64,000 nucleotides of DNA from Octopus sinensis (lineage: Eukaryota): the NCBI RefSeq assembly GCF_006345805.1, contig NC_043026.1:558001-622000 (forward strand). Direction: 5' to 3'. The notes beneath the pieces were generated by a model that was given only the letters and a program-made list of their open reading frames with translations, searched no databases and was not told the origin of the DNA. The position numbers and the translations under genes are program-made. This document shows, in pieces, positions 7,858 through 61,649 of this stretch (its first letter is position 1; each line of letters opens with the position of its first letter).

Positions 7858-9030
7858 CTTATGTTTCCTGTCCATAAAGAGTTTAGCTTTATGGTGTATT
7901 GTCTGACCCCAAAACCTGTTGACCTGCGAACTCTTCAAAATATGGAGGGTGAAAAGCCTTGCTACTCAAAGGTAAATAATTGGGAATTATCTCCGTTTGC
8001 TATTAGCTACTGACTTCTGGCTGAACCACCATCTTGTGGGCTCCAAAATGTTAGCAGGAACCTCCTAAAATGTAAACATGGCCTGAAGATCTGCATTCTG
8101 GAGTTGAGGATGTTCCCTGGTTTGAGTGAGTCCTTTAGGATTCTCATGCATTCAGCTATGCATAACTAGTAACGTTTCGTCCCGTTGATGTAGAGGCCTG
8201 AGGTCTCAAGGATTTTCCATGAGATTGCGTATGGTATCCCATTGTCTCCTAGTTGCCAGACATGGCTGGCCAGTGATGTTACGTCTCTCCTTTCAAGAAC
8301 TTTGGAAGAAGACATGATTGGAAATACACTGCTTGAAAGATTTCCCAGAACATCTGATGTTTCTATGTGGGCGTGTGTTGTTGGTGCTGTACCTATTGGT
8401 GTTGTTGCTGTTGCTGTTGTTGTTGCTGCTGCTGTCACCGACATAGTTGTTGGAGCTGTGACTGCTGGTATTGGCATTACTTGAAGTGGTGACATCAGTA
8501 ATGTTATCACCACTGCTGGTTATAGTTAAGGCACCATTGTTATTGTTGCAGTCCTTGCCAACAGTAGGGGAGTTGCCATTGCTGCCAGAGGTGTCATTAG
8601 CTGAGGTTCTGCTGGTGTTTCTGCCAGGGTCACTGTTGCTGCTGTTATAGCTGGTGATGGCACTGGACCTGTTGTTGTTGCACCTATAGGGGTTGTCCGG
8701 TCTACTACTGTAGATGTTAGGGAAGCTATTGGTAAGTCTGGTGTTGATAGTGATGCTGCTGTTGTTATTGTTAGTGTTGCTGCCATTGTGGGAACTGCAA
8801 ATGTTGTCACTGATGCTGTTATTGCTATTGTTGCTAATGCTGTCAGCTGTGGCAATGGTAGTGGTGTTGCTGGCTCTGTTCTTGTGCCTATGGCTGATAC
8901 TTCTTTATCTTTGAGTTGCAAGGCTTTTCCCCACTCCATATTTTGAAGAGGTCATAGGCCAACAGGTTTTGGGGTCTGATGATATGCCATAAAGCTTAAC
9001 TCTTTATGGACGGAAAACCTGAGGCAATCC
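7858..9030 (-). mobile_element. Penelope-like element remnant: GIY-YIG C-terminal half bounded by ~115-bp inverted repeats
   Basis: Minus strand 8400-8000 reads GKSFKQCISNH / TSLASHVWQLGDNGIPYAISWKILE..TKRY*LCIAECMRI..NILNSRMQIFRPCLHFRRFLL, the PLE endonuclease tail (ST.LS.HIW.LK...W.I...C.LC..E...LN.R.E....C.H..KFLL). Segments 7862-7975 and 8905-9022 are inverted copies. Confidence 0.8.
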
Positions 9031-9034
9031 AGAA

Positions 9035-9290
9035 ACGATGCAAGTAACCAACTGTGGAGACCCTTGTTGTGGGACATGCAAATTAATTGAGTGAGGGACA
9101 ACCAAAAGATGCAAGAATAGGAAGGAATTAAAAGTGAATGCAAACATGAATTGCAAACAAAAACCCTCATCTACTGCATCACATGCTCACAATTCAATGA
9201 AGACTACATTGAAGAGACAGGTAAGAAACTGACCAGCTGTGTAAATGTGCATAAACAACAAATTAAGGCATTCAGATACTACTGAGCAAC
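9035..9290 (+). mobile_element. Penelope-like GIY-YIG endonuclease fragment (second family)
   Basis: NCGDPCCGTCKLIE*...VNANMNCK / KNLIYCITCSQFNEDYIEETGKKLTSCVNVHKQQIK, with one stop and one frameshift. Confidence 0.85.
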
Positions 9291-9624
9291 TCCAAAAATA
9301 TACACGGATTGTAGGCAAGCAACTGAAAAAACATTAAAAAGACTTCACATTAATTGTGAATTGGGTCCAATCTCTAGATTAAAGCCATAAAAACAGGCTT
9401 TTTTTTCTTCGTCAACATAATACACGAAAAATATAAATACAAATAATTATACATACTTGTATAAAACAAATTCACACGTCCACATACAAATATTTGCACA
9501 TATAGATCAAAGATAAGCAACAGAGAGTGACAGAATAGTACACCCATAAGACATGTTATCTATGGATAAACACCTCAGCTACTTTAGCTTTCTATGACGT
9601 ATCTGGATTTGGTATGATACACAG

Positions 9625-28136: not shown

Positions 28137-30880
28137 ATATCATCATCATCATTTAGCGTCCGTTCTCATGCTAGCATGGGTGGACGGTTCAACTGGGTCT
28201 TGTGAAGCGGAAGGCTTCATCAGGCCCAATCAGATCTGGCATTGTTTTCTACGGCTGGATTCCCTTCCTAACGCCACCCACTCCGTGAGTGTAGTGGGTA
28301 ACTTTTTACGTGCCCCCTGCACAGGTGCCAGACAGAGCTGGCAAACGGACACGAACGGATGTGCTTTACGTGCCACCACACGGCCAGCCAGCTGGCAAAC
28401 TGCCACGAAACAGATGCGTTTTTTACGTGTCACGGCACGGGGCCAGGCGAGGCTGGCAGGACACGAACGGATGGTGCTTTTACGTGCCACCAACACGGGG
28501 CCAGACAGAGCTGGCAAACGGCCACAAAACGGATGGTGTCTTTTACATGTCACCGGCACGGGGGCCAGGCGAGGCTGGCAAACGGACACGAACGATGGTG
28601 CTTTTTACGTGCCACCACACGGGGGCCAGACAGAGCTGGCAACGGCCACGAAACGGGATGGTGGCGTTTACCGTGTCCCGGCACGGGGGCCAGGCGAGGC
28701 TGGCAAACGGACACGAACGGATGGTGCTTTTAACGTGTCACTGGCACTGGTGCCAGGCCAGAGCTGCAACGACCGACAGATGGTGGCTTTTACGTGCCAC
28801 CAACACGGGGGCCAACACTGGCAACGACCCACGAACGGATGTGCTTTTACGTGTCACCATCACGGGGGCCCTGATGTTTGATCGACCTCAATTGGTTTGA
28901 TTTTGATTTGACTATTCTCACTGGTCTTGCCGGTTTTTCCTCACGCACAGCATACTTCCAAAGTCTCGGTCAACTGGTCATTTCCTTGTGAGACCTAAAG
29001 TTCGAAGGTCGTGCTTCACCCCCCTCGACCCAGGTTTTTCCTGGGTCTACCTCTTCCACAGGTCCCCTCAATGCCAGGGTGTGGCACTTTCGCACACAAC
29101 TATCTTCAGCCATTCTCATCACGTGACCATACCAGCACAAACGTCTCTCTTGCACACAACAACTGATGCTTCTTAGGTTCAACTTTTCTCTCAAGGTACT
29201 TACACTCTGTCAATTATGAACACTGACATTACACATCCATCGGAGCATACTAGCTTCATTTCTTGTGAGCTTACGCAAATCCTCAGCAGTCACAGCCCAT
29301 GTTTCACTACCATGTAGCATGGCTGTACGTACACATGCATCATACAGTCTGCCTTTTACTTTGAGCGAGAGGCCTTTTGTCACCAGCAGAGGTAAGAGCT
29401 CTCTAAACTTTGCCCAGGCTATTCTTACTCTAGCAGTTATACTTTCAGCACACCTGCCCCCGCTACTGACTTGGTCACCTAGGTAATGGAAACTATCAAC
29501 TGCTTCTAGTTTTTCTCCCTGGAAAGTGACAGAAGTTGGTCTCAGAGCATTTTCAGTGTTTATTGTTCCTGAGCATCTGCCACATACAAAAACCATCTTC
29601 CTAGTTAGCCTTCCTTTGACATTGCTGCACCTCTTATGTGTCCATAGCTTACACTTGGTGCATCTTATAGAGTTTCTACCTACACCTTTTCTACAGATCG
29701 AGCAGGGCCATCTACCTGAAGGCGTTTGTGATTGGTCTACCTTCCTACTTATTAGGAGTTTGGTTTTGGTTAGGTTGATTCTAAGGCCCTTCGATTCTAA
29801 ACCTTGCTTCCATACCTGAAACTTCTCCTCTAGTTCTGATAGAGATTCAGCAATTAGAGCAAGGTCATCGGCATAGAGGAGCTACCAGGGGCATCCTGTC
29901 TTGAATTCCTCCGTTATTGCCTGGAGGACTATGATAAATAGGAGGGGACTGAGGACTGAAACTTGGTGGACCCCAACCTCTACCCTGAATTCTTCACTGT
30001 ATTCGATGCCAACCCTCACCTTACTAGCAGCGTCTCTGTACATGGCTTGTACAGCTTTCACTAACCATTCATCTATCCCTAGTTTCCTCATTGACCATCA
30101 GATGAGGGATTGGGGGACCCTGTTGAAGGATTTCTCCATATCAACAAAAGCCAGGTATAGGGGCTTGTCTTTGGCTAGGTATTTCTCCTGCAGCTGTCTT
30201 ACTATGAAAATAGCATCAGTAGTACTTTTCCCTGGCACGAACCCAAACTGCATCTGATCTAGGCTAACTCTCTCTCTAATTAGTTCGGCTATGACCCTCT
30301 CCGTAACCTTCATTACCTGATCCAGCAGCTTGATACCCCTGTAGTTATTTGTATCTAGGGCGTCACCTTTACCTTTGTAGCAGCTGACTATTATGCTGCT
30401 ACACCAGTCATTGGGAATGACTCCTTCGTGTATCACCTGGTTAACTATACAGGTGACTAGGCTATAGCCGACACTACCGGATATTTTGAGCATCTCTGCA
30501 GTAATACCTGATGGGCCTGGGGCTTTCCCTGTTTTCATGCTTTTAATTGCCTTAACTACTAAGGAACTGTCAACTCAGATTGCTGGTCCCTCTGTTGGGT
30601 CAACATTCGGCAGACTCTCTTTATCCCATTCATTTTCCTCATTCAGCAACCTTTCATAGTGGCTTCTCCAAACCTCTCTCTTTGCATCCGTGCGAACACA
30701 TTTTTCTCGTCATCCGTGCGAACACATTTTTCTCCTACCACGTCACGATTCTCTCTTACACACTGTCTTGCTATACGAAATACCTCAAGTCTTTCATCCT
30801 CACGGCGCAGGACATTGGCAAATTTTTTCCTATCTGCTTCCCCTCTGGCTAAATAAACCTGCCTCCTAGCTTCCCTTCTT
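28137..30880 (-). mobile_element. 5'-truncated RTE LINE, same family as 9884-12160, opposite orientation
   Basis: MKTGKAPGPSG..., GVHQVSVLSPLLF, LYADDL and HGSETW motifs; (GAT)n tail; minisatellite in the 3'UTR. Confidence 0.95.
28300..28875. repeat. ~60-bp GC-rich minisatellite (about 10 units) inside the RTE 3'UTR
   Basis: Unit ctttttacgtgccaccggcacgggggccag(acagagc/gcgaggc)tggcaaacggacacgaacggatggtg. Confidence 0.85.
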
Positions 30881-40525: not shown

Positions 40526-41209
40526 TTTAATCAAATTTTTGCTCAACTAGAGCTGTCTCAGGGCTAAACAGTGTCAAATTATATTTCAGTTGAGAAAATA
40601 TTGTCATTGTCCATTATTCTGTTGTTTAATCTAAATATTGTTACACAATGTGAAGGTTTAGTTGTTGTTTGCAAATATGTAAGTTTCACACAAGATTCTG
40701 TGATGTAAATTATAATAAATTAAAAAGTTCAGTTGTTCAGGTAAATGTATATTTCTAAAGTTTATATCTATAGAAAATTTATAAATTTTCCACTGTTGAA
40801 TCTCTTCTTTTATGTAGCATCTTTATCTTCCACTGATATTTCTTTGTTATTTCAGAATATGGAATGACATTGGCATAACTGAAGATCCATTCACAATATT
40901 TATCATCTTTTAAAGACTAAAGGAAAATGTTATACAGAGGAAATATATAAGACTCTCTCTAAATCTATGGTAAAATTCCTATAAAATATTTGCTCTGACC
41001 TGAGATTATTAGCAATATTTCTGAACATCTCTTACTGGAGTTTTTGAAGATGAGTTTGTAGGCAAATTAATCTTCAAAAAGCCTTAACAAAAAAGAGTTC
41101 TGAGAGAAAGGTAACAGTGGACAGAAATACAGCAGTGGAAGTATTTGTAAGAGTAAACTATAAGAACAAAAGCAGGAAAAATATATATGGTGGTTTGAGA
41201 AGGGAAATA

Positions 41210-42199
41210 ATGGAAAAGAATGAGAAACTTGAGGAATTTATTTTACCAGAGAACATGATTAAAAAGAGAAAAAAATTATATGACTGTGACGTCTGTAATA
41301 AGACCTTCTCTCAGAAAAGAAATCTTACTATGCACAAATATATTCATACAGGAGAGAAGCCATATCACTGTGATATCTGTGGTATATCTTTTACTTCCAG
41401 TGGTAACCTAACTAGACACAAACGTACTCATACAGGAGAGATGCCGTATTGCTGTAATATCTGTGGTAAATCCTTTTCTCAAAACAGTAATCTATATGCT
41501 CACAAACGTATTCATACAGGAGAGATGCCCTACCATTGTGACATCTGTAATAAGTCCTTTTGTCAAAAAAGTAATCTATATACTCACAAACGTACTCATA
41601 CAGGGGAGAAGCCATATTACTGTGATATCTGTGGTAAATCATTCTCTCAAAGTTGTAAAATAACTCCACACAAACGAATTCATACAGGAGAGAAACCATA
41701 TCGTGTTCAAACCAAAGAGAAGCCCTATCATGTTCATACCAAAGAAAAGCCCTATCATTGTGATGTCTGTGGTAAATCATTTTCTCAGAGTAGTCAGTTA
41801 ACAATACATATACGTATCCATACAGGAGAGAAGCCATATCAGTGTGATATCTGTGGTAAATCATTCTCGCAAAATAGTACCTTAATTTCACACAGATGTA
41901 TTCATACAAAGGAGACGCCATATCACTGCGATATCTGTGGTAAATCATTCACTAAACGTAGTGCTTTAACTCCACACAAACGTATTCATACAGGAGAGAA
42001 ACCATATAACTGTGATATCTGTGGCAAATCATTCTCTCAGAATGGAAACTTAGCTCAACACAAACTTTTTCATACAGGAGAAAAACCCTTTCACTGTGGC
42101 ATTTGTGGTAAATCATTCTCTCAAAATAGCAGCTTAACGAAACACAAACGTATTCATACAGGGGAGGAACCACATTTCTATGATATGTTAACCTCTTAA
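41210..42199 (+). CDS. C2H2 zinc-finger protein, 10 tandem fingers, 329 aa from the first in-frame ATG (frame open from 41054)
   Basis: Ten CxxCx12HxxxH units with TGEKPY-type linkers and no internal stop; acceptor at 40855 upstream; no KRAB or SCAN domain recognisable. Confidence 0.93.
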
Positions 42200-45343: not shown

Positions 45344-46437
45344 GAAGGTGTCCCAGGATCGAGCAAATTGATTTTAAAAATCACAAAAATTCATGTTTCT
45401 TACTTAATAATGGTGTTAAAACATGTAGATTTATATATCTTATGGCAAATATCAAATATCTCCTGCAATGCTCTCTGAATGTATCCTTTAAATTCAGCCA
45501 AACTACTGCTCCATCCAGAAGGTGGAGGTTGAGAGAGTGAGTGAGCAAAATTGGGGAGAAAAACTTGTGGACAGATAAGCAAGAGCCAATAGGAATGAAA
45601 ATAAATTATTAAGAAGTAAAAAAAAAATAGGCGTCGGAGGGGCGATGCATATCCTGCGCCCAGATAATTTTTTTCGCAAATTATATTGTGGATTACAATG
45701 CGTTGATTACCCATGCTTTTTAATTAAACTCAACATTTTTTTCCTAGTATCTCAATCATAGGTATTTATTCTCAGGTGTAATTAAGAAATCAACTCGTAA
45801 ATAAATGAAATCTTTGAATCCATCACTGTACACGTACATACATACCCGCACACCCACATGTATGTATTTATGTATGTATGTACACACACGTGTCTCGCGC
45901 ATAGGTACTCCGTGTAGTCGAGGGTCGATTCATATGTAAAAGAAAGTGAACAAAATGAAATACTTAAAGAAAATATTGCATAGAATTTGAGAGTTTTTTT
46001 CACCATTATAGGTATTTATACTCCAGTGAAATTAAGAAATCAACTCTAAATAAACGAATCCCTCGAATCCATAACTGTACACACACACACAGTAGCATAT
46101 CTATGTATGTATTTATGTATATTTTGAAGATAATGAATCCAAATTTTCATCATTTCGAGCCACTCATCCAATGAGTATTTCTGCCACATTTGGCGAAAGT
46201 CCGTTCAGTCGTTTTCCAGTTATTTTGCTAACACACAGACGAACAGACCAGTGATTACAATACCATGCTTTCACTTGCGCACGCAGGGTAACAATTATAA
46301 AGATTATAAAATTATAGGCAAAATTAAAAATTTATATATTTTAACAGGTATTAAAATGTTTTGTTTATCAACATAAATAAAAATGAGTTTCTAAAAAGAT
46401 GTCCGATTTCACCGAAATAGATAATTCTGGGACACTG
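45344..46437 (-). mobile_element. Tc1/mariner deletion derivative with a nested insertion
   Basis: TIR remnants gaaggtgtcccag / ctgggacactg|ta; transposase-tail-like PPPSGWSSSLAEFKGYIQRALQEI; paralogous to 60679-61203. Confidence 0.65.
45690..46295 (-). mobile_element. Helentron/DINE-1-like non-autonomous element (tentative)
   Basis: 5' ttaccctgc..gcatggta hairpin followed by tctgttcgtctgtgtgttagc; subterminal repeat gcatgggtaa; internal tandem duplication; absent from the paralogous block. Confidence 0.45.
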
Positions 46438-46704
46438 TACGTGCGCGTGCACTCACACACAATATGCATACATACAGATGCACATATACATACGCAAACA
46501 CAATGATGCAGACGTAGTTGTGTGGTTAAGAAGCTTGCTTTGCAACCATGTGCTTTCGGGTTCAATCCTACTGTGCAGCACCCTGGACAAGAGTTTTCTA
46601 CTTATAGTCCCGGGTTTTATCATAAAAGTAATTATTTGCGAGTGAATTTGGTTGACAGAAGCCGTGTGGTCACGTCGTCTAAAACAGATCTTTTGATTGG
46701 TTAG

Positions 46705-46754
46705 TTAAGGTTTTAGGCGGATGAAGATGGCCATGGAATCAGCTGTTTCAAAAC
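46705..46754 (-). CDS. Secreted PAN-domain protein, coding exon 5 (last): GFETADSMAIFIRLKP*
   Basis: Acceptor ttattttgcAG, phase 1 matching exon 4, in-frame TAA. Confidence 0.9.
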
Positions 46755-46872
46755 CTGCAAAATAATAAAAGTAACGACAATAACAACAGCAACAACACTA
46801 ACAACAGCAACAACACTAACAGCAAGATTAACAAGACGAATATCAGTAATAGCAAATGCAACTTTGGGAATT

Positions 46873-47010
46873 TCTCCCAGAACTACGTTAACAGTACACG
46901 TATCTGTGGAGTACTCAGCCACTTGCATGTTAATTTCACGAGCAGACTGTTCCATTGTTCGGATCAACTGGAACGCTCCTCGTCGTGACCGACGGAGTAT
47001 CATCAGACAG
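46873..47010 (-). mobile_element. LINE 3'-end fragment (separate family) at the duplication breakpoint
   Basis: ccgtcggtcacgacgaggagcgttccagttgatccg...gagtactccacagatacgtgtactgttaacgtagttctggg; recognised from memory as a common octopus repeat. Confidence 0.5.
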
Positions 47011-47319
47011 GATTACAACCACCTAGTTCCGGGTTATACACACACATATACAGATAGATAGATGTATATATCTATGTGCGTATGTCTTAGTTTTTTTCCC
47101 ACCCCCACCGCTTTATAACCGGTGCTTGTGTGTTTACGTCACAATAAATTAACATTTCGGCAAAAGTGAGCGATAGCATAAGTACAAGCCTTTGAGAAAC
47201 CCGTCGATTTGTCCCCTTAAAACACATCATGGTGGTGCCCCTGCATAGCCGCGGCCAAATAACTGAAACAAGTAAAAGATAAAAGATATTTACACTGCAC
47301 TTCGATTAGTTAAGACCTA

Positions 47320-47760
47320 TGTTCATCATATTATGTGGAGAAAATCCCTAGAGAAGGACATCATGCTCGGAATGGTCAGTGGCAAGAGAGGAAGAGGCCG
47401 ACCAAGAACCCGCTGGCTTGACACCATCAAGAGTGATACCGGAATGGTCATAGCCAATCTGAAAGAAGCGGCCCAGGATAGAACTGACTGGAGGACACTG
47501 ATCCATTGAGTAACCGAGAATCGACTTCGACTGAGCGGATAGATAGATACATATATATATATGTGCTCGGAATGGTCAGTGGCAAGAGAGGAAGAGGCCG
47601 ACCAAGAACCCGCTGGCTTGACACCATCAAGAGTGATACTGGAATGGACATAGCCAATCTGAAAGAAGTGGCCCAGGATAGAACTGACTGGAGGACACTG
47701 ATCCAACGAGTGACCGGGAGTCGACTTCGACTGAGTGGATAGATAGATAGCTAGATAGAT
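47320..47760 (+). mobile_element. BovB-like RTE 3' end, tandemly duplicated, (GATA)n tails
   Basis: LEKDIMLGMVSGKRGRGRPRTRWLDTIKSD...DRTDWRTLI.RV...RLRLSG* occurs twice. Confidence 0.88.
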
Positions 47761-48225
47761 AGATGTTCATCAGTTGTCTTATTCTTACTTGTGTTAGTTT
47801 TTGTCGCTTCTCATATACGAAGAAGAAAATCTAGGAGGATCAGTCAATTATGATTTTATTCAACACATCCCTCTCTCAGACTCACGAACCAATGGCAGCA
47901 GTCCTTCACTTCTTCTAAGCCCTGTAAAAGAACTCGGAAGCTTTGATCTCTAGCCAGGTTTTTTGCGATGCCTTTACAGCTTGAAACATTTCAGCACCAC
48001 CCCGGCTCGTACGAAATTTTCCATACCTACTCATGTTTAATATTGTACCACATGAGTATTTTTTTGTGAAGTACTGTGAGACATAGGCTTTACTGTGAAG
48101 GTATCATAACAACGAAACATGTCTTGAGTTGCTTCCCATGTTTGCCATGCCATTATATTTGGACTTTTAGTACTTACTGCATTAACGGGGGGGGGGGGAG
48201 TTAAAACTGATGGTGAAATACTTAC

Positions 48226-48386
48226 CGTCATACCATGTGACTTTCGTACTTCTATTTGAGTAAATTAATAAAGGATAATGTGGAAATATTTCCCATGTGC
48301 AATAATACTTTTGAAGAACAGCCAACCAGCCGGTGTCTCCCTCACAACCTCCATGGTAAGCTGATATATAGAAATTACGTCTGTTA
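48226..48386 (-). CDS. Secreted PAN-domain protein, coding exon 4: NRRNFYISAYHGGCEGDTGWLAVLQKYYCTWEIFPHYPLLIYSNRSTKVTWYD
   Basis: ttcctttacAG acceptor, G|GTAAGT donor, 161 nt, phase 2 to 1, open frame. Confidence 0.92.
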
Positions 48387-48476
48387 CTGTAAAGGAAGAA
48401 AACAAAAGAAGTTGTTGTGGTTTTGGTTTTGCTGTTGTTGTCGTTGTCAGATCTTGTAATTTAAAAGTTTGTCTGT

Positions 48477-48648
48477 GGCGCAGGAGTGGCTGTGTGGTAA
48501 GTAGCTTGTTTACCAACCACATAGTTCCGGGTTCAGTCCCACTGCGTGGCACCTTGGGCAAGTGTCTTCTGCTATCGCCTCGGGCTGACCAAAGCCTTGT
48601 GAGTGGATTTGGTAGACGGAAACTGAAAAGAAACCCGTTGTATATATG

Positions 48649-48692
<44 letters not shown>

Positions 48693-48897
48693 TCTGTGTT
48701 TGATCCCCTAGCATTGCTTGACAACCGATGCTGGTGTGTTTATGTCCCCGTTACTTAGCGGTTCGGCAAAAGAGACCGATAGAATAAGTACTGGGCTTAC
48801 AAAAAGAATAAGTCCCGGGGTCGAGTTGCTCGATTAAAGGCGTTGCTCCAGCATGGCTGCAGTCAAATGACTGAAACAAGTAAAAGAGTAAAGAGTA
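48477..48897 (+). mobile_element. Full-length tRNA-SINE family A
   Basis: ggcgcaggagtggctgtgtgg ... gtaaaagagtaaagagta. Confidence 0.92.
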
Positions 48898-49518
48898 ACT
48901 ACGTAATTGTGAAGTTTCCAAGTTCGAACCGACACTGCTCGCTGATACATTAGACAGATAGGCAGATAAACACTGTACAGATAAGAAGAAGCAGAAGAGG
49001 AAAGAGAATCATACAAATGTTGTCAGACATGTTCATAAGTAAATGGATCTCGGTCTGTTTCGAAGATGACTGAGTATTCACTTGCTTGATTCCTGTGAAA
49101 TTACTGCCCAACGAATTAGTAGCATGCAATTGAAACCACAAATTTATAATCACCAGCTGGACATCCTGACCACTAGAACTAGCGATTTCATTGCTGGACA
49201 CATTTGTGTATGTATGTATATGAATACGTATGTGTGTGTGCTTGTGTGCGCTTAGTTGTTGGTAGTTTATTCGCGAACGAAATTCGATGAATTCGTTGAC
49301 ATACTATAATATAATACAAGGAAGTTAAACCTCAGACTTTGCAGGTAGACATTAATTAATAAAATTAATTCCGCCATTAAACTGGTAATATTTATTGCAA
49401 CGATAGAAATATAGGCGAAGTGTATGTAGTTGATTATATAGACACTGTACTTCACGGGTACTTTATTTATAGACCCCAGCAGGATAACAAAAAATAAACA
49501 GTGATAAAAATTACTTAC

Positions 49519-49682
49519 AACGCTCCTCTAATTGAGAAGTAATTGTGAGAGTGGTCAAATAGATCGGACCAAGGAGAACTTATCAACTTTTCAGGAGAGA
49601 ACCAGCTTTCAAGGGTTGTATTTCGTCCATCAAACACCATATCAACTACAGCTGTTTGGTTTTTATAAATCACTAGTTTCAC
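49519..49682 (-). CDS. Secreted PAN-domain protein, coding exon 3: VKLVIYKNQTAVVDMVFDGRNTTLESWFSPEKLISSPWSDLFDHSHNYFSIRGA
   Basis: ttttctttAG acceptor, GTAAGT donor, 164 nt, phase 0 to 2. Confidence 0.92.
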
Positions 49683-49699
49683 CTAAAGAAAAGCTTGAA

Positions 49700-50285
49700 T
49701 TATTATTATTATTATTATTGAGTGAGAGAGTAGTGCATGCCATCAAAGTGACACTGGAGTAAAATATACAAAGCCCAGTATACCCATCATGACTACCCGT
49801 CTGATAAGGGTACACCAGGCACATGCATCACAACCATGTGTGTGCAACATGGTGATCTCATATCAAAACAAACAGCACATGACCTTGCAGGTGGGGCCCA
49901 GTTAGAATTTTCTTCAGGTCGAGTAGCCCATCCCACTCAAAAGGTCCCTGAATAAGGGTTGTTTAAGGATGTTGAACAAAACACCCATGTTTCCAAAGGT
50001 GAATTATTCAAGCCCCAAAGAATCCCTCTCAACACATGGCTATGATGCTCCCCCACTACTTCTGCTCGTGATCAGAGATGCACATATCATCAGCCACCAA
50101 GGGACATGCTCAACTGGTTAAGGTCAAACAACTGACAAGCATATCTGTGGTATTGAGCAGAATATTTACTGTAGCCCATCTTTTATACCAAGACAAAACA
50201 ATGTACATGATAACACTTCCAATCAGTTAAGATGAGAAGCCATGAGAGCCACTGCCTTGTACTGCATCAGGGCATTTATTATTAT
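49700..50285 (-). mobile_element. ~550-bp non-coding retroelement inserted in (TAA)n
   Basis: Flanked by (TTA)n on both sides; inverted, roughly 90% identical copy at 52168-52650. Confidence 0.8.
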
Positions 50286-50339
50286 TATTATTATTATTAT
50301 TATGGATGCCTTCGAAAAGCAGTCAAACAAAAGTATTCA

Positions 50340-51240
50340 ATCAAATTTTCTCTGTAGATTATTGAGGTTTCTGTTACAAAGTAACACACTGAAGTTTAAA
50401 CAAAAGATTTTACCACCAGACAAAGGGTTGCGCCCTGGGTACCCCCATGGTAGCTAATTTCGCTAACATCTTCATGACGAAATTCGCAACGCGGTTACTG
50501 ATGACATTCAAATCTCTTCATGGTCATGAACCAATACTCTGGTTACGGTTCATTGTTGACATGTTTTTTTGTCTGGGAAGGATCACAGGATAGCTTAATG
50601 GACTTCTTGAATCTCTGTGACTGTTATGCTAAAAACTATGGCTTTCAACCCAACATAAAATTTACGTCTAGTTTTCCAAAAACTAGCATTGAATCTTTGG
50701 ACACAAATGTGAAGTTTTCTGGAGGCAGAATTGTGAGTTATTTTGCAAACTCATGTCGTCCCACATTTATTTCCACTGCCGCCCCAATCTTCCACATCAT
50801 ATTATTCAGTCAAATCCAAAATCCCAACTTTCGAGGATAAAACAGATTTGTACTGACATAGGGGATTACTGGAAATATGCAAATGCTTTTGTACATCATT
50901 ATTTTAGACGTGGTTACAGTGAATCACGATTGAAGGAAATAGCAAATGAAATAGCTAAGATTAGCAAACATAGTCAAACCTTCACGCATAAGTTTAGCAA
51001 ACACAATATAATAGATAACAGAATTCTTTTAGTGATTATCTGGCGCCAAAATTTCGCTGGCATTTCAAAAGTGTTGCATAAAAGTTACCAGCATGTGGCG
51101 ATAAAATATCCTCGTTTCAAACAGATATTTCCGCAGCCTCCTATTGTAGCCTTTGGACGGAATAAGAATATAAGAGAAATATTGACCTCTATTTTTGACT
51201 CCAAGATAGTGAACATTGGAGTATCTGCACGCTGAACATT
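50340..51240 (+). mobile_element. Penelope-like reverse transcriptase fragment
   Basis: FYHQTKGCALGTPMVANFANIFM, LWLRFIVDMFFVW, IKFT..F.K..IESLD, YFRRGY and PPIVAFGRNKNIREIL. Confidence 0.88.
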
Positions 51241-51614
51241 GAAAAACTGCTGCAAGAGAGGTACTTACATTGAAATATTTTAGGTATTTTTCCTAATTTC
51301 TATATCCTTGCCCTTCCGTGTTCTTCTTTGGCAATGGAATATTAAAAATAACATTATGCTATAGGCGTAAAACAAAGATGTACTAAGGATGATCTAGCAG
51401 TGCTTTGGACTCTACTCACCTGAAGACGTGCATAAATTCAGCTATTTTTTAATCATATTTATGCAATAGTGTGTACAATGTATGCATTCAGCAATTACGT
51501 GCTGAAAATGATGAGCAGAAACAATTGTAGTGATTAGTGATTAGTAATAAAAGCTGTTCATTCCATCTTTATATGTATTAACGTTTATTGAAACCACACA
51601 TATATATCATTATG

Positions 51615-51657
<43 letters not shown>

Positions 51658-51946
51658 ATGTATGTATGTATGTATGTGTGTGTGCAAGATAGCGCAAATA
51701 TATTATGAACGTTTTTAGATCGCGGTGCCAATAAACTTGTGAACATAATAGTTTATAGCAATCAGTACTTCTTAATGTGCCCTGACGTTCTGAGTTTTAA
51801 TACAGTCAAGGTATACTTTGTCTTTTAAAAATCAATAAAATAAGTAATCTAATAGATTCTCACCTCTCATAAAATGGATGACATTATGCCAACTTAATTC
51901 TATGTTTGTGTAAATGAATGTGCATAAAAATCGTTCCTGCACGTAC

Positions 51947-52125
51947 CTCCTCGATGGAAAGATCGCTCCAGAAGTCGAGAATAGGATTTCGGAAGAAGTT
52001 AGGACAAAAGTTATCGATGCATTTCTCTACTTTCCAGGTTGAAGGATTTCCTATATTCATAAATGAATTATAGACTAATGAACCAGCTCCCATTGATAGG
52101 AAATATGCTTTGACCCATTTTCTTT
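51947..52125 (-). CDS. Secreted PAN-domain protein, coding exon 2: RKWVKAYFLSMGAGSLVYNSFMNIGNPSTWKVEKCIDNFCPNFFRNPILDFWSDLSIEE
   Basis: ttatttcAG acceptor, GAG|GTACGT donor, 179 nt, phase 1 to 0. Confidence 0.92.
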
Positions 52126-52134
52126 CTGAAATAA

Positions 52135-52165
<31 letters not shown>

Positions 52166-52167
52166 TA

Positions 52168-52650
52168 TAATACTTGGTATAAAAGATGGGCTACAGCAAA
52201 TATTCTGCTCAATACCACAGATTTGCTTGTCAGTTGTTTGACCTTAACCAGTTGAGCATGTCCCTTAGTGGCTGACGATATGTGCATCTCTGATCATGAG
52301 CAGAAGTAGTGGGGGAGCATCATAGCCATGTGTTGAGAGGGATTCTTTGGGGTTTGAATAATTCACCTCTGGAAACATGGGTGGTTCTTTCAACATCCTT
52401 AAACAACCCTTATTCAGGGACCTTTTGAGCGGGATGGGCTACTCAATCTGAAGAAAATTCTAACTGGGCCCCACCTGCAAGGTCATGTGCTGTTTATCTT
52501 GATATGAGATCACCATGTCGCGCACATATGGTTGTGATGCATGTGCCTGGTGTACCTTTATCAGACGGGTAGTCATGATGGGTATATTGGGCTTCATATA
52601 TTTTACCCCAGTGTCACTTTGATGGCATACACTGCTCTCTCACTCAATAA
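52168..52650 (+). mobile_element. Second copy of the (TAA)n-inserted non-coding retroelement
   Basis: Ends ctctctcactc(aat)n; reverse complement of 49715-50195. Confidence 0.8.
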
Positions 52651-52659
52651 TAATAATAA

Positions 52660-53500
52660 TTACTCAAGATCAATGCCTACCTACAAGGAACTACCAGGCC
52701 AACATATTAAAGAACGGCAGTAGCCGAACATGTCGTGTATGTCAACAATAAAATGAAACCATTGATCGTGTTGTCTCCAAGTGCAGTCTTCTTGCGCCTA
52801 CAAAGTTTCTCAACAGACATGATAGAGCTACACAATATATTCACTGGGTAATTTGCAAAAACCTGGACTTGCCCCATGATAAAAAGTGATGGGAACACAA
52901 ACCACCTCCAGAAATGACAAGATCTCACTCCTCTAGAACTTCACCATTCAAACTGACAGAAAGATAGATGTAATTAGGCCAGACATCATATTGAAAGACT
53001 TCAGACAAAGAACATGCCTTCTCATTGATATGACTGTCCCAATCGATATAAACGTATCTGTCAAGACCTACCAAAAACTGAGCAAATATAAAGATCTTGA
53101 AATAGAAATCAGCAAAATGTGGAAGCTGAAGACTAAAACAATACCTGTTGTCATAGGTGCCCTGGGAATGATAGCGAAAGGGACTGATTGCTACCTAACT
53201 CAGATACCAGGAAACCCCAAAATGGCAGAAATTCAAAAGATAGTGCTCATGGGAACTGCTCATATCCTACGCAAAATACTTTCTATGTAATCTCAAATTT
53301 TAAAACAAACATAATTTTCGTATGGTTTTTTAGACATTCACTAAGTACAACACTATGTACAAAACCAAAACTATGGCACCCTAGGCATAACACCAACATG
53401 AACTCCCAACTTGTTGTCTCTTGAGGTCTCTGGGTGAGTCTTGGAGCCAATTTGTACAAATGTAAAGCAAAAGTCAAACATATAATAATAATAATAATAA
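52660..53500 (+). mobile_element. R4/Dong-like LINE 3' fragment (CCHC knuckle and restriction-like endonuclease)
   Basis: CRVCQQ*NETIDRVVSKC, RHD, RPDI, LIDMTVP, QKLSKY and PVVIGALG; (TAA)n at both ends. Confidence 0.9.
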
Positions 53501-53502
53501 TA

Positions 53503-53549
<47 letters not shown>

Positions 53550-53898
53550 GGTGATGATGATGATGATTTCATTTATATGCCTCAAGGGCAAAGGATCACT
53601 TCTGAGTATGATTTTAAAATGCACCCGGTTGTGAAGTTAAGACAAGTAGATGTCAGAGACATTGAAAGCAAAGGCAAAGAGGTGCAACAGCAACAACAAC
53701 AACAGCAACAAAAACAAGATCAACAGCAGCACAAACAATAATATTGATTTTACATTTTGGCACAAGGCCAGCAATTCCGACGGTAGAGGTGTAAGTAGAT
53801 TACATTGGCCTCAGTCTTCACTTGGTACATTTATCCAACTGCAGAAACTAAAAAAAAAAAAGCAATACCAACAGTAATAATTGAAAAGATTCACTTAC

Positions 53899-54229
53899 TT
53901 CTATAGAAGGAAGACTCGTTGGTGTCATTCGTGCTGACGACTGTCATTATATTTTTCGGTGAGTAATTCTTACAAACATGGCTGACTTCGTTGTAAGTAA
54001 AGAATTCCGATTGGCTCTGTAGAGCATAGAAGGCACATTCCAGTAGACTTTGTCTATAATAGAATCGTTGCACTGTATTTGTCTGAAGGTAACCAAAAGA
54101 ATAGCCAGGAGGCAAAGGTTTGTAGTAAGCTTCATCAAATTCTTGATCCTGGGTAACAGTCAGAATTGTTGTAAGGGTTAACAGCAGCACTGTTGTCACA
54201 ACCGGACGGGTGAAAGGAAACAGGGACAT
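53899..54229 (-). CDS. Secreted PAN-domain protein, coding exon 1: signal peptide plus PAN/apple-like module
   Basis: ATG 54229, MSLFPFTRPVVTTVLLLTLTTILTVTQ (hydrophobic leader), SLLECAFYALQSQSEFFTYNEVSHVCKNY; donor AGA A|GTAAGT; acceptor 8 nt before the ATG after a long pyrimidine tract. Confidence 0.9.
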
Positions 54230-55764
54230 TCTTGGCTCTAAGATTACGAGAGGGAGACAGAGGGTGGAAAGGAATGGCCTGAAAGAGAGAAAGAAAGTGG
54301 ATGGGAGAGATTGGAAGAGATTCGGCAAAAAAGACAAAGTGAAATTTATTATATAGGGAGAGAACGGGGAACAGAAAGACAGAGAGAGAGAGAGAGAGAG
54401 AAGAAAAGAGTTAGAGAATAACAGAGAGATATCCTGAAAAAGAAGAGAGAGAGAGATGAAATGAGAAGATGGAAAATGTTTGCGAGAGGAAGGATATTTG
54501 GAAAAGAAAATGAAACATGAATAAATTACAGTTTAGAAGAGAACATCTTAATTAAATTATAGTGATTGGTTAAGACACAGGTCTTAGATATGAGTTTTAA
54601 ACTGTTTCCAATAGTGGGCCGTGGTTGGAGATAGCGTGGGATTTGATGAGTTTGGAATCACTGGTTAGCTAGCGTTGTTCCAAGGTCTACTGTGACCCGG
54701 AGTTGACTTATTTGTCAAGGACCTAATTAAGAGTCAGTTTGTAATTCGATTGATGTGTTGGCGATTATTAGCCTTGTGGTGGTGTTGGCGGGGCAACTCA
54801 TCGAAGTGAAGGAAAAGCCTGATTCCAAACTTCCGCTAACTTGCCAAAATACCCAACCATGGGTAAGTGTTCAGGTGCAAATACTGAGGAAAAATCGGGA
54901 ATCAGAGACGCTGAGGCAGTTTCACACTGTCTACAACCTGAAAAACCTCGCAAATCCTGCGACGACGCTGATAATAAATTGTAGGGTTCCGTTCTATTTC
55001 TGTGGGTCAATTAGTGGCATTGAAATAAGGGACACACTATATGGGCAGCCACCTGTCCTCCTTACCAAACGGCCCTGGCTTGGGACATATCGAACACTCT
55101 GCACTAGAAAGATAGAACCGGACAACACACCGGAGAGTAAGAACATAACAATACAAACAACATAGAGACAGCCTACAAATGCAGCTTACGTGGCAGAGAC
55201 TGCCATTTGCGCAGAGGATTGTTCAGACGCAGGCGACCCGATAGGGCGGGAAGTTACGGCCTTCATCCATGGTCATTAATGAGGGACTGAGGTGCAGGCT
55301 CAGCTGTTGGGTTAAGAGGCTTGCGGTGCAACCATGTAGTTTCGGGTTCAGTCTTCTTACTATTGTAGCAAGCCTTTAAATACTTCGTCAGTGAATTCAG
55401 TAGACGGAGATTGTGTGGAAGCCCGTTGTATCCTTGTATGCGGTGTATGTGGTTGTAACTTTGTCTTCTCGTTGGAACAATAGCAAGGCTTATGAATGCA
55501 GCTCTATAGTTTCTCACACTCAGCCAACTGTAATTCAAATAATCGATTATGAGATGTTAACATCTTTTAGTTGTCTTTTTTTAAAATTTAAAGTGGAAGG
55601 GTTGCTGAGTAAAGCCAAGCACATCGAGGTAAGGGGCGATCTATTGGTAATTAGAACAGCCAATCAGTTGATTTAAACGTAAGGAGCCATCACGATAATG
55701 CCTTGAAGATAGTTGTTCTCCGCCCGAAGTAAGGAAAGCCGCTACCCCGATATCTTCAAGGAAA

Positions 55765-60250: not shown

Positions 60251-60678
60251 ATTTTGTCCTCCCCGGTCACTCATCTTTCCTCCACACATGAACAAGAAAA
60301 TTGAACTGAAAACAAGTGTGTATATAAATACATTTTTTTTTTTTATTTAATCGCCAAAAGTTACAACGTGACTCAGTGTTTCGTGCATTGACACTTATCA
60401 AACTTACCAAATGGGTTCCAAATTGTGTGGGTGGGTGAGGTGTTTACATTTATATACAGACCGACTGAAATGATGAATTTCATTATCAACGGATTGTTCT
60501 AGAAGAAATTAGAAAAAAACTTACATAGTTACGTGGATTATGAATATTGTTTTCAAATGTCTTTGCCTGTTGAGCAGTTCAATAAATAATTGATTAATAA
60601 AGTAAAATAAATTGTGTAAAGAGAGAGTTAAAGAATATATGAATATATAGACACACACATAAGCAGGAGTATCATAAA

Positions 60679-61203
60679 CAGGGTGTCCCAGAATTAACTT
60701 TCTATTTTTTATGGAAAACGCGCAAATGTAAAACGAAAAACTGACAAAATTTTACGTTCATTAATTAATTAGGATACCCAAATAAATCAATTTATAAATC
60801 TTACATCAAAATTTTATTGAAAATTTTCGACATTTGCTTCGTCTGTATCCCTGCAAATTTCAAATATATCCTCGGCATTACGAATCACATTTGGAAGCAT
60901 TGTAAGAATTATGCCCTGCAATGCTAACTGAATGCATTCTTTAAATTCAGCCAAACTATTGTTCCATTCTCCGGGTGGAGGAAGAGAAAATGATTTCAGC
61001 GAAAGTAAAAGTAGTGACCAAACAATCGGAATCCAACAGAAATGAAAATAAAATTATAAAAAACACAATTATAAAATTATAGACAAAATAAAATACTTAT
61101 AAATTTTTAACGGATATTAAACAAGCCAAACATAAATAAATGCGAGTTTCTGATGAAACTGTCCGATTTCACTGAAATAGATAATTAATACTGGGACACG
61201 CTG
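60679..61203 (-). mobile_element. Tc1/mariner deletion derivative
   Basis: CAGGGTGTCCCAG / CTGGGACACGCTG|TA TIRs. Confidence 0.75.
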
Positions 61204-61469
61204 TATGTACTCACGCACACACATACACATGCACACATACACATGCACATACATACACGCACACTCACAGATGCAGACGTGGTTGTGTGGTTAAGAAGCT
61301 TGCTTTGCAACCATGTGCTTTCGAGTTCAATCCTACTGTGCAGCACCCTGGACAAGAGTTTTCTACTTATAGTCCCGGGTTTTATCATAAAAGTAATTAT
61401 TTGTGAGTGGATTTGGTTGACAGAAGCCGTGTGGTCACGTCGTATAAAACAGATATTTCGGTTGCTTAG

Positions 61470-61519
61470 TTACGATTTCAAGCGGATGAAGATGGCCATG
61501 GAATCAGCTGTTTCAAAAC
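61470..61519 (-). CDS. Last coding exon of a tandem paralog: GFETADSMAIFIRLKS*
   Basis: Same acceptor and length as 46705-46754, with the first 38 nt identical; upstream exons not found within the window. Confidence 0.85.
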
Positions 61520-61649
61520 CTGCAAAATAAGAAAAGTAACAACGACAATAACAACAATAACAACACTAACAGCAAGATTAACAAGACGAATATCAGTAAT
61601 AGCAAATGCAACTTTGGGAATTTGATTTCCATATTTAATCAAAGTAATA

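What the first reader, a model, noticed from the sequence alone, without database searches (positions are those of the whole stretch)
46705..54237. Complete hidden five-exon gene for a secreted PAN + Trp/Cys-rich domain protein
Exons 54229-53899, 52125-51947, 49682-49519, 48386-48226 and 46754-46705 have GT-AG ends and compatible phases (1,0,2,1), and sum to 885 nt (294 aa plus stop) with no internal stop. The product has a signal peptide, a two-Cys PAN/apple-like module, five N-glycosylation sequons, and a ~185-aa domain (W....F / C....C / FRNPILD.W / V.L.IYK / VF.G / WFS...L.SS.W.DL / N.FSI.G / RR.F.I / GGC..D.GWL / C.WE / YS / AD.MAIFI). From memory, that domain is widespread in lophotrochozoans, mostly uncharacterised, and sometimes labelled beta-1,3-glucan-binding-protein-like (unverified). 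A carbohydrate-recognition or immune role is a hypothesis.
Basis: partly seen in the sequence, partly recalled or inferred. Interest (0 to 1): 0.75.

Follow-up and report, generated by a model that had tools for sequence, protein, structure and literature searches.

The report
Mis-annotated octopus secreted lectin-like gene
The five-exon gene is real: it is one copy of a tandemly multiplied octopus family of secreted proteins whose large C-terminal domain has no name in Pfam, occurs across marine invertebrates and some bacteria, and looks like a stripped-down, very divergent relative of the fibrinogen-type sugar-binding domain, while the public annotation of this locus joins the wrong 3' end.

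Summary
Observation confirmed. The five minus-strand exons (331/179/164/161/50 nt) have GT-AG borders, phases 1,0,2,1 and give an uninterrupted 294-aa product. The neighbouring paralog has the same exon lengths (328/179/164/161/50) and phases.

The window is Octopus sinensis CM016888.1. The gene is only half hidden. RefSeq models the locus as a 428-aa protein that shares residues 1-211, then jumps about 40 kb to an Asn/Ser-rich low-complexity tail and skips conserved exons 4-5.

The protein has a signal-like N-terminus, a degenerate two-Cys PAN/apple-like module (weak support) and a ~185-aa domain with no Pfam or PDB sequence match. That domain has 1125 cluster representatives (E<=1e-3) in molluscs, a flatworm, a coral, echinoderms, hemichordates, amphioxus and Myxococcota. 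Its commonest partner is PAN (18 of 52), alongside lectin-type modules.

In the bacterial proteins the domain follows a fibrinogen A-subdomain ('YCDxxxxGGGW'). Two AlphaFold models find only fibrinogen-related domains as top PDB fold matches, but weakly (TM 0.3-0.4). I read it as a probable, unproven, divergent fibrinogen-related domain, much as intelectins are.

The 'beta-1,3-glucan-binding' label was not found. A glycan-recognition role is inference only. Transcript support for the corrected model is missing.

The parts
53899..54229 (-). Exon 1 (331 nt; aa 1-110 plus 1 nt): start codon, signal-like hydrophobic segment (aa 9-25), degenerate two-Cys PAN/apple-like module (Cys65, Cys86)
   Evidence: The public model P0001 uses the same start. 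The PAN-like assignment is weak.
51947..52125 (-). Exon 2 (179 nt; aa 111-170): start of the C-terminal domain ('W-V-K-A-Y' strand, Cys146/Cys151, FFRNPILDFW)
   Evidence: Same length as exon 2 of paralog P0002.
49519..49682 (-). Exon 3 (164 nt; aa 171-224). The public model leaves this exon after aa 211 (about 49560), where no GT donor is present
   Evidence: dS versus P0002 is only 0.058 here.
48226..48386 (-). Exon 4 (161 nt; aa 225-278): most variable part of the family, holds the Cys239-Cys254 loop with D-x-G-W-L. Skipped by the public model
   Evidence: All family-invariant residues are retained.
46705..46754 (-). Exon 5 (50 nt; aa 279-294 plus TAA): terminal strand ADSMAIFIRLKP. Skipped by the public model
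   Evidence: dN/dS is 0.08. The exon plus about 430 nt of 3' flank is 86% identical to the upstream paralog's terminal exon region.
61470..61519 (-). Terminal exon of the upstream tandem paralog (P0002, LOC118768485). The rest of that gene lies beyond the window end
   Evidence: L002 42100-42149 mapped to the window.
8296..9321 (-). The two distal exons that the public 428-aa model attaches to exons 1-3 (about 9208-9321 and 8296-8847). They encode an Asn/Ser-rich low-complexity tail. In my reading they are not part of this gene
   Evidence: The bridging residues PQSY cannot be placed at a canonical junction.

Best explanation
Window 46705-54229 (minus strand) holds an intact five-exon gene of Octopus sinensis. 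It is one member of a tandemly duplicated, octopod-expanded family of about 290-aa proteins. The product has three parts: (i) a cleavable-looking signal peptide; (ii) a degenerate PAN/apple-like module that keeps only one Cys pair; (iii) a compact beta-rich domain of about 185 aa with two further conserved Cys pairs.

Shown: the gene structure, the family membership, the wide distribution of domain (iii) and its habitual pairing with PAN and lectin-type modules.

Inferred, about 55-60%: domain (iii) is a very divergent offshoot of the fibrinogen-related domain (FReD) that has lost the N-terminal A subdomain. In bacterial homologs the same domain is still preceded by the A subdomain, and FReDs are the only fold family that AlphaFold models of it retrieve.

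Inferred, about 40%: like ficolins, tachylectin-5, mollusc FREPs and intelectins, it works as a secreted recognition module for glycans or acetylated ligands. Paralogs would differ in specificity because variation is concentrated in residues 212-278, around and after the Cys239-Cys254 loop, and the PAN-like module would add a second contact or mediate oligomerisation.

The public RefSeq model of the locus (428 aa) is most likely a mis-join that replaces the variable, probably ligand-facing, half of the domain by a low-complexity tail.
For: Gene model: GT-AG at all junctions and an open 885-nt frame. Exon lengths and phases are the same as in paralog P0002. O. bimaculoides P0005 breaks into five exons at the same protein positions. 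The query keeps 37 of 38 family-invariant residues, including all 9 in exons 4-5. dN/dS is 0.63 overall and 0.59 for exons 4+5.

Family: 51 octopod hits, 14 of them on the same 15.1-Mb scaffold. An upstream tandem paralog ends at 61470.

Domain spread: 1125 representatives at E<=1e-3 and 665 at <=1e-10. Taxa are listed. Partners: PAN_1 in 18 of 52, PAN_4 in 8 of 52, plus F5/8C, C-type lectin, SUEL, WSC, EGF and Sushi.

FReD link: the eukaryotic domain profile aligns collinearly with the bacterial units from 'GGGW' to the end (hhalign probability 100%, E 5.5e-46, 184 columns). The bacterial units match genuine FReDs in the PDB (FIBCD1 E 2e-9, tachylectin-5A, tenascin, fibrinogen beta/gamma, intelectin). 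They also match a FReD family profile (probability 96.5%, E 8.7e-10), Pfam Fibrinogen_C positions 2-56 and NCBIfam NF040941 'fibrinogen-like YCDxxxxGGGW'. Two AlphaFold models (pLDDT 80-94 over the domain; domain-only pLDDT 85.7, pTM 0.83) give only FReDs as the top 18 and top 30 PDB matches.

Variability: 1.80 bits in aa 212-278 against 0.88 bits in aa 112-211.

Precedents: PAN/apple plus canonical FBG in molluscs (PMC7588048), and intelectin as a highly decorated fibrinogen-like fold (PMC9434060).
Against: No transcript evidence was available. No protein identical to the 294-aa product, or to its exon 4-5 part, is present in the 5.8-billion-cluster collection. NCBI chose another 3' end.

The FReD relationship is not significant by any direct test on the eukaryotic domain. 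There is no Pfam Fibrinogen_C hit in 52 members. hhalign of the eukaryotic profile against fibrinogen gamma or a FReD family profile is null. Foldseek E-values are 0.013-1 and TM-scores 0.31-0.42, below the usual 0.5. The confident FReD-to-bacterial-unit alignment covers only about 57 columns, of which about 22 overlap the octopus-type domain.

The models are of paralogs (P0002, P0029), not of the window's own product. The PAN-like module is poorly modelled (pLDDT below 50) and lacks the inner PAN disulfide. No ligand-binding residues could be mapped. Function is pure inference. dN/dS of exon 4 alone (0.75, 54 codons) cannot exclude neutrality.
Confidence: 0.6

Rival explanations
1. The canonical five-exon mRNA is not made. 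Either the public 428-aa isoform (exons 1-3 joined to a distant Asn/Ser-rich tail) is the real product, or this copy is a recently silenced member of the tandem array whose reading frame has simply not yet decayed.
For: The RefSeq model P0001 has that structure. No protein identical to the 294-aa product is in the large collection. dN/dS is fairly high (0.63 overall, 0.75 in exon 4). No poly(A) signal lies within 900 nt of the stop.
Against: The P0001 divergence point has no GT donor, and four bridging residues cannot be placed in the DNA. Its tail is an alternative frame of a low-complexity repeat, and the model spans an unrelated ZNF gene. Exons 4-5 have perfect splice sites, keep all 9 invariant residues despite 41% divergence (roughly 1% by chance) and match the paralog's exon lengths exactly.
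Confidence: 0.15
2. The C-terminal domain is an independent, so far unclassified beta-rich fold with no common ancestry with fibrinogen-related domains. The bacterial proteins are fusions of a short fibrinogen-like N-terminal piece to this domain, and the Foldseek matches are noise among beta-rich globular domains.
For: The eukaryotic profile gives no match to FReD profiles and no Pfam Fibrinogen_C hit. TM-scores are 0.31-0.42 with rmsd 8-10 A. The confident FReD alignment of the bacterial units stops about 22 residues into the shared domain.
Against: Out of 350,542 chains, the top 18 and top 30 hits of two separate models all belong to one superfamily. The bacterial unit (about 225 aa) has the length of a FReD. 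The FReD-matching stretch runs through the 'GGGWT...W' strands that are part of the shared domain rather than stopping at its border. A global alignment puts the C..D.GW..C loop and the last strand opposite their FReD counterparts, though at low probability. Intelectins show the same pattern of retained N-terminal signature and divergent remainder (PMC9434060).
Confidence: 0.3
3. The protein is extracellular but is not an immune or glycan receptor. It could be a matrix, egg-coat, mucus or adhesion component, or a secreted binding protein used in octopod-specific tissues such as suckers or skin.
For: Distant homologs combine the domain with ZP, TSP1, Sushi, EGF, fn3 and an adhesion-GPCR-like context, which are typical of matrix and adhesion proteins. 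FReDs themselves include non-lectin members such as tenascins, angiopoietins and fibrinogen.
Against: Lectin-type partners are also frequent (F5/8C, C-type lectin, SUEL, WSC). Tandem expansion with a hypervariable block is more typical of recognition families than of structural proteins.
Confidence: 0.3

Closest known systems
Octopod 'uncharacterized protein LOC...' PAN-plus-domain paralogs (e.g. O. sinensis LOC118768485 = P0002; O. bimaculoides LOC106872447 = P0005, UniRef 'Apple domain-containing protein')
   Same: Same length, same five-exon structure and phases, 56-67% identity end to end, same six Cys, same scaffold cluster.
   Different: This copy is modelled differently in RefSeq (428 aa, chimeric tail). 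It has V115 where all the others have Ile.
Fibrinogen-related domain proteins (Pfam PF00147: ficolins, FIBCD1, tachylectin-5A, mollusc FREPs/FReDs, some with PAN/apple: PMC7588048)
   Same: Secreted and of comparable size. FReDs are the only fold family retrieved. Bacterial homologs carry the FReD A subdomain in front of the same domain. PAN plus FBG is a known mollusc architecture. There is a C-terminal Cys...GW...Cys loop and a hydrophobic last strand.
   Different: There is no A subdomain and no Pfam hit. There is no detectable profile-profile similarity beyond the first strands. TM-scores are below 0.5. The Ca2+ site and acetyl-binding pocket were not identifiable.
Intelectins / X-type lectins (hIntL-1, XEEL)
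   Same: They set the precedent for a lectin whose only sequence link to FReDs is the short N-terminal signature, while the rest is a heavily modified fibrinogen-like fold (PMC9434060).
   Different: Intelectins keep the A-subdomain signature and the octopus protein does not. Intelectins were not among the top 50 fold matches. No homology beyond the shared FReD piece was shown.
Bacterial 'fibrinogen-like YCDxxxxGGGW domain' proteins (NCBIfam NF040941)
   Same: The ~180 residues after the 46-aa NF040941 signature are clearly homologous to the octopus domain (E 5.5e-46, 184 columns).
   Different: These are giant multi-repeat bacterial surface-type proteins (TIG, FG-GAP and choice-of-anchor repeats). 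The NCBIfam model covers only the A-subdomain piece that the octopus protein lacks.

Membership tests
Octopod PAN-like + C-terminal-domain paralog family | End-to-end alignment with family members | tested here: met
   E 1e-128 to 1e-101, 56-67% identity, 91-100% coverage to 13 full-length members.
Octopod PAN-like + C-terminal-domain paralog family | Five coding exons with phases 1,0,2,1 | tested here: met
   331/179/164/161/50 nt against 328/179/164/161/50 nt in P0002. P0005 breaks at the same residues.
Octopod PAN-like + C-terminal-domain paralog family | Family-invariant residues, including six Cys | tested here: met
   37 of 38 invariant columns are kept, and the exception is Ile to Val.
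PAN/apple domain (PF00024, PF14295, PF08277) | Match to a Pfam PAN model at or above its gathering score | tested here: not met
   The query gives no hit at E<=10. Paralogs give PAN_3 in 3 of 17 (best E 0.005) and PAN_1 in 1 of 17 (E 0.17), all sub-threshold. Distant family members do have significant PAN_1 (18 of 52, best E 6e-8).
PAN/apple domain (PF00024, PF14295, PF08277) | Core of two nested disulfides (four or more Cys) | tested here: not met
   Only Cys65 and Cys86 are present. hhalign places them opposite the outer Cys pair of the N-terminal modules of distant members, in which PAN is the commonest partner (E 2.7e-4, probability 41%).
PAN/apple domain (PF00024, PF14295, PF08277) | PAN fold (beta-sheet packed on a helix) | tested here: inconclusive
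   AlphaFold pLDDT is below 50 for residues 1-107 of the paralog.
Fibrinogen-related domain (PF00147) | Match to the Pfam or a FReD family profile | tested here: not met
   No Fibrinogen_C hit in the query, 17 paralogs or 52 diverse members. hhalign of the eukaryotic profile against FReD profiles is null.
Fibrinogen-related domain (PF00147) | N-terminal A subdomain with its disulfide and the 'YCDM..GGGWT' motif | tested here: not met
   It is absent from the octopus protein, whose domain starts at the 'W-x-x-x-Y/F' strand. It is present in the bacterial homologs.
Fibrinogen-related domain (PF00147) | FReD fold of the B and P subdomains | tested here: inconclusive
   The top 18 and top 30 Foldseek PDB hits are all FReDs, but with E 0.013-1, TM 0.31-0.42 and rmsd 8-10 A.
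Fibrinogen-related domain (PF00147) | Ca2+ site and ligand pocket of the P subdomain | not testable with these tools
   No such Pfam hit. None of the source names shown in the two octopod hit tables, nor any name among the 30 clusters looked up, carries such a label.

The most novel reading that the evidence does not exclude
The ~185-aa domain defines a large, so far unnamed family: at least 1100 clusters at 50% identity, found from Myxococcota to amphioxus and absent from Pfam. It would be a third branch of the fibrinogen-related superfamily beside canonical FReDs and intelectins. In animals this branch has shed the A subdomain and is typically teamed with PAN. In octopods it has expanded in tandem with a hypervariable ligand-facing block, giving a new class of invertebrate pattern-recognition lectins.
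Probability: 0.3. Interest if true: 0.65.

Novelty: new variant of a known kind. Interest (0 to 1): 0.5.

Why it matters
Three things follow.

(1) Annotation. The RefSeq model of this locus, and probably of other copies in the array (several 'hypothetical' O. vulgaris models are obvious fusions of two copies), is wrong in the very part of the protein that varies between paralogs. Family-wide analyses that rely on public models would miss that part.

(2) Domain discovery. A compact, confidently foldable domain with over a thousand sequence clusters across invertebrate phyla and bacteria has no Pfam model and no characterised member. Defining it and linking it to the fibrinogen-related superfamily would give names to hundreds of 'uncharacterized' proteins that sit beside PAN, C-type lectin, SUEL, F5/8C and WSC modules.

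(3) Biology. Cephalopods have no adaptive immunity. A tandemly expanded secreted family with a hypervariable block is a reasonable candidate for a recognition repertoire, comparable to snail FREPs. That can be tested directly with recombinant protein.

Tried and rejected
I did not work around this and modelled the paralogs P0002 and P0029 instead.
- Pfam on the query found nothing at E<=10. PDB sequence searches with the query and with the family profile gave only noise (Rab-31, ToxS).
- A second large search with a diverse domain alignment returned only octopod proteins again, with no new names.
- I tried to locate the four residues 'PQSY' that bridge exon 3 and the distal exons in the public model.
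- hhalign of the eukaryotic domain profile against fibrinogen gamma and against a 106-sequence FReD profile was null. Merging the bacterial and eukaryotic sequences did not extend the FReD alignment beyond about 60 columns.
- A literature search for six family locus names gave no paper.
- An exact solution of P0005's exon junctions failed in my script. Only the tblastn breakpoints are used for that gene.
- The poly(A) signal search downstream of the stop was uninformative, with the nearest signal at +935.

Full report
**1. The observation**

The five proposed exons are on the minus strand at exactly the stated coordinates: 54229-53899, 52125-51947, 49682-49519, 48386-48226 and 46754-46705. They sum to 885 nt and translate without a stop into 294 aa followed by TAA. 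Every intron starts with GT (gtaagt or gtacgt) and ends with a pyrimidine-rich tract plus AG. The phases are 1,0,2,1.

The window has 37% G+C and eukaryotic architecture. It is base-for-base identical to Octopus sinensis assembly GCA_006345805.1, scaffold CM016888.1, about 558001-622000 (0 mismatches in 64,000 bases).

**2. Is the gene model right, and is it 'hidden'?**

The product aligns end to end with annotated octopod proteins. The best full-length hit is P0002 (LOC118768485; E 1e-128, 67% identity, 100% coverage). A further 50 hits are all from O. sinensis, O. bimaculoides, O. vulgaris and Argonauta hians, plus one metagenomic entry.

I solved the exon structure of the P0002 gene exactly. 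O. bimaculoides P0005 breaks at the same protein positions. The query keeps 37 of the 38 columns that are invariant in 17 full-length paralogs, and the single change is Ile to Val.

The locus is not unannotated. RefSeq carries a 428-aa model, P0001, named 'putative uncharacterized protein DDB_G0291812'. It then continues with sequence encoded at 9321-9208 and 8847-8296, about 40 kb downstream, so the model spans 45.9 kb.

Several features make P0001 look like a mis-join:
- The point of divergence ('...tccgatct|atttgac...') has no GT donor.
- Four bridging residues (PQSY) cannot be placed anywhere at a canonical junction.
- The tail is Asn/Ser-rich low complexity that reads as poly-Gln or poly-Thr/Ala in the other frames.
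- The supposed 40-kb intron contains an unrelated nine-finger C2H2 zinc-finger gene on the other strand.

By contrast, exons 4 and 5 have perfect splice sites. They keep all nine family-invariant residues although exon 4 is only 59% identical to P0002, which is roughly a 1% chance under free drift. Their dN/dS against P0002 is 0.59, and 0.08 for exon 5 alone.

The caveat is that I had no transcript data. No protein identical to the 294-aa product, or to its C-terminal part, exists in the 5.8-billion-cluster collection. I therefore rate the five-exon model as very probably the functional gene structure (about 0.85), but its expression is unproven.

**3. Anatomy of the protein**

- Residues 9-25 form the only strongly hydrophobic stretch. 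It is preceded by Arg8 and followed by T-V-T|Q-D-Q, consistent with a cleaved signal peptide. No signal-peptide predictor was available.
- There are six Cys: 65 and 86; 146 and 151; 239 and 254. There are six N-x-S/T sequons, not five.
- The N-terminal module (about residues 36-96) is PAN/apple-like only in a weak sense. The query has no Pfam hit. Three of 17 paralogs touch PAN_3 (best E 0.005) and one touches PAN_1 (E 0.17). UniRef labels two paralogs 'Apple domain-containing'.
- hhalign of the octopod N-termini against the N-termini of distant family members that have a single module upstream of the domain gives E 2.7e-4 at 41% probability over 46 columns. The two octopod Cys sit opposite the outer Cys pair, and the inner pair is replaced.
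- AlphaFold does not model this module (pLDDT below 50).
- The context argument is stronger. Among 52 diverse proteins that carry the C-terminal domain, 18 have a significant PAN_1 (best E 6e-8) and 8 have a PAN_4 upstream of it.

**4. The C-terminal domain**

It has no Pfam-A model and no sequence match in the PDB. It is nevertheless a large family. A profile of 17 octopod paralogs, scored against 1.84 billion cluster representatives, finds 1125 proteins at E<=1e-3, 665 at <=1e-10 and 68 at <=1e-30. Many are long proteins with two to four copies.

The clusters I looked up come from:
- Molluscs: Octopus, Argonauta, Pomacea, Aplysia, Mercenaria, Saccostrea, Solemya.
- A flatworm: Macrostomum.
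- A coral: Oculina.
- Echinoderms: Acanthaster, Anneissia, Antedon.
- Hemichordates: Saccoglossus, Ptychodera.
- Amphioxus.
- A Myxococcota bacterium, plus unnamed metagenomic contigs.

None of the looked-up clusters carries a glucan-binding name. The names are 'uncharacterized', or are borrowed from partner domains ('neurocan core protein-like', 'SVEP1-like', 'vWD and EGF domain-containing').

Partner domains are all extracellular: PAN, EGF, F5/8 type C, C-type lectin, SUEL lectin, WSC, ShK, Sushi, TSP1, fn3 and ZP.

**5. What is the domain related to?**

Two AlphaFold models were made on paralogs, because the spliced product itself was not accepted by the tool.
- In the P0002 model the domain has pLDDT 80-94.
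- The domain-only model of P0029 has pLDDT 85.7 and pTM 0.83.

The scores are weak. The best E is 0.013, TM is 0.31-0.42 and rmsd is 8-10 A.

A sequence bridge exists. Four representatives carry eight units in which a textbook FReD start ('C..I...G...G.Y.IDP......V.CDMT.DGGGWT') is followed directly by the octopus-type domain. These are P0087 from Myxococcota, and P0089, P0095 and P0108 from metagenomes.

These units match genuine FReDs in several tests:
- PDB: FIBCD1 at E 2e-9, plus tachylectin-5A, tenascins, fibrinogen beta/gamma, angiopoietins and also intelectins.
- Pfam Fibrinogen_C, positions 2-56.
- NCBIfam NF040941, 'fibrinogen-like YCDxxxxGGGW domain'.
- Fibrinogen gamma C, whose sequence I validated against 3fib_A: 91% probability, E 1e-6.
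- A 106-sequence FReD profile: probability 96.5%, E 8.7e-10.

The eukaryotic domain profile aligns with the bacterial units collinearly from the 'GGGW' strand to the last residue (probability 100%, E 5.5e-46, 184 columns). The animal domain therefore equals the bacterial unit minus the A subdomain.

The limits of the FReD link are as follows:
- The confident FReD alignment covers only about 57 columns, of which about 22 lie inside the shared domain. The longer 91-column alignment has a low-confidence tail.
- The eukaryotic profile alone finds nothing in FReDs.
- A global alignment that places the 'C..D.GW...C' loop and the final strand opposite their FReD counterparts has only 10% probability.

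I conclude that FReD ancestry is the best available explanation, at about 55-60%, but it is not demonstrated. Intelectins are the documented precedent for a lectin that keeps only the N-terminal fibrinogen signature on a heavily remodelled fold (PMC9434060). PAN/apple joined to canonical FBG domains is already known in Biomphalaria, Lottia and Crassostrea (PMC7588048).

**6. Family dynamics**

Fourteen gene models of the family lie on this 15.1-Mb scaffold. The next copy upstream, P0002, ends inside the window at 61470-61519.

Variation among paralogs is concentrated in residues 212-278, with mean column entropy 1.80 bits against 0.88 bits for residues 112-211. This is the part that the public model deletes.

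Exon 3 and the first 540 nt of intron 3 are much more similar to P0002 (dS 0.058; intron 84% identical) than the other exons are (dS about 0.4). This suggests a gene-conversion tract.

**7. Mechanism proposed**

Shown: an intact gene for a secretion-type, probably N-glycosylated two-module protein of a tandem family.

Inferred: the C-terminal domain is the business end and acts as a binding module, most likely for glycans or acetylated ligands by analogy with FReD lectins. Its specificity would be set by the variable block around the Cys239-Cys254 loop. The PAN-like module would provide a second interaction or mediate oligomerisation.

Nothing here tests binding. Matrix or adhesion roles are a serious alternative, because distant homologs pair the domain with ZP, TSP1 and Sushi.

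**8. Verdict**

The novelty is modest for the gene itself, since the locus is known and the family is annotated as 'uncharacterized'. It is greater for the domain, which is a large unnamed family whose probable link to the fibrinogen-related superfamily I could not find described. A search of about 8.3 million papers for six family locus names found nothing. That search does not cover most subscription journals, and I could not consult InterPro or CDD.

Noticed in passing
window 41117-42199 (+): Intronless ORF of 360 aa made of 84-bp tandem repeats, encoding nine C2H2 zinc fingers (Pfam zf-H2C2_2, E 1e-82). The public annotation calls a 329-aa gene here. It lies inside the 40-kb 'intron' of the public model P0001.
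   Followed up: partly
window 8296-9321 (-): The two distal exons of the public 428-aa model encode an Asn/Ser-rich tail that reads as poly-Gln or Thr/Ala-rich in the other frames. The four residues (PQSY) joining them to exon 3 cannot be found in the DNA at a canonical junction. How the model was built is unexplained.
   Followed up: partly
window 48387-49682 (-) versus L002 30964-32398: Exon 3 has dS 0.058 against paralog P0002, while the other exons have dS about 0.4. The first 540 nt of intron 3 are 84% identical. This looks like a gene-conversion tract between neighbouring copies.
   Followed up: partly
L002 7468-15518 (minus strand of that locus; outside the window, in intron 1 of the P0002 gene): A further, inverted copy of the family (all five exon-like blocks; exon 2-3 equivalents 97-98% identical to P0002) sits inside the 17.9-kb first intron of P0002. 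It is not in the list of called genes.
   Followed up: no
window 47364-47749 (+), inside intron 4: A 200-bp unit, duplicated at 95% identity, encodes '...GKRGRGRPRTRWLDTIKSDTGM.IANLKEAAQDRTDWRTLI*'. From memory this resembles the C-terminal tail of a non-LTR retrotransposon ORF. Not verified.
   Followed up: no
window 45705-46780 (-) versus 60470-61550 (-): Exon 5 together with about 430 nt of 3' flank is 86% identical between this gene and the upstream paralog, so the duplication unit includes the 3' UTR region. The nearest AATAAA/ATTAAA is 935 nt past the stop.
   Followed up: partly
window 28304-28870: A G+C-rich (about 50%) tandem array with periods of 57 and 125 bp, in an otherwise 37% G+C window. 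An ORF over it has no Pfam match.
   Followed up: no
proteins P0015, P0019, P0040 (O. vulgaris models; not in the window): Several 'hypothetical predicted protein' models of O. vulgaris are fusions of two or more family copies, or of copies with unrelated sequence. UniRef names such as 'C-type lectin domain-containing' or 'ADP-ribosyl cyclase' for family members probably stem from such fusions.
   Followed up: no
proteins P0087, P0089, P0095, P0108 (bacterial or metagenomic): Giant bacterial proteins (887-2257 aa) with TIG, FG-GAP or choice-of-anchor-Z repeats end in two or three tandem units of FReD A subdomain plus the octopus-type domain. The direction of any transfer between animals and Myxococcota was not examined.
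   Followed up: partly
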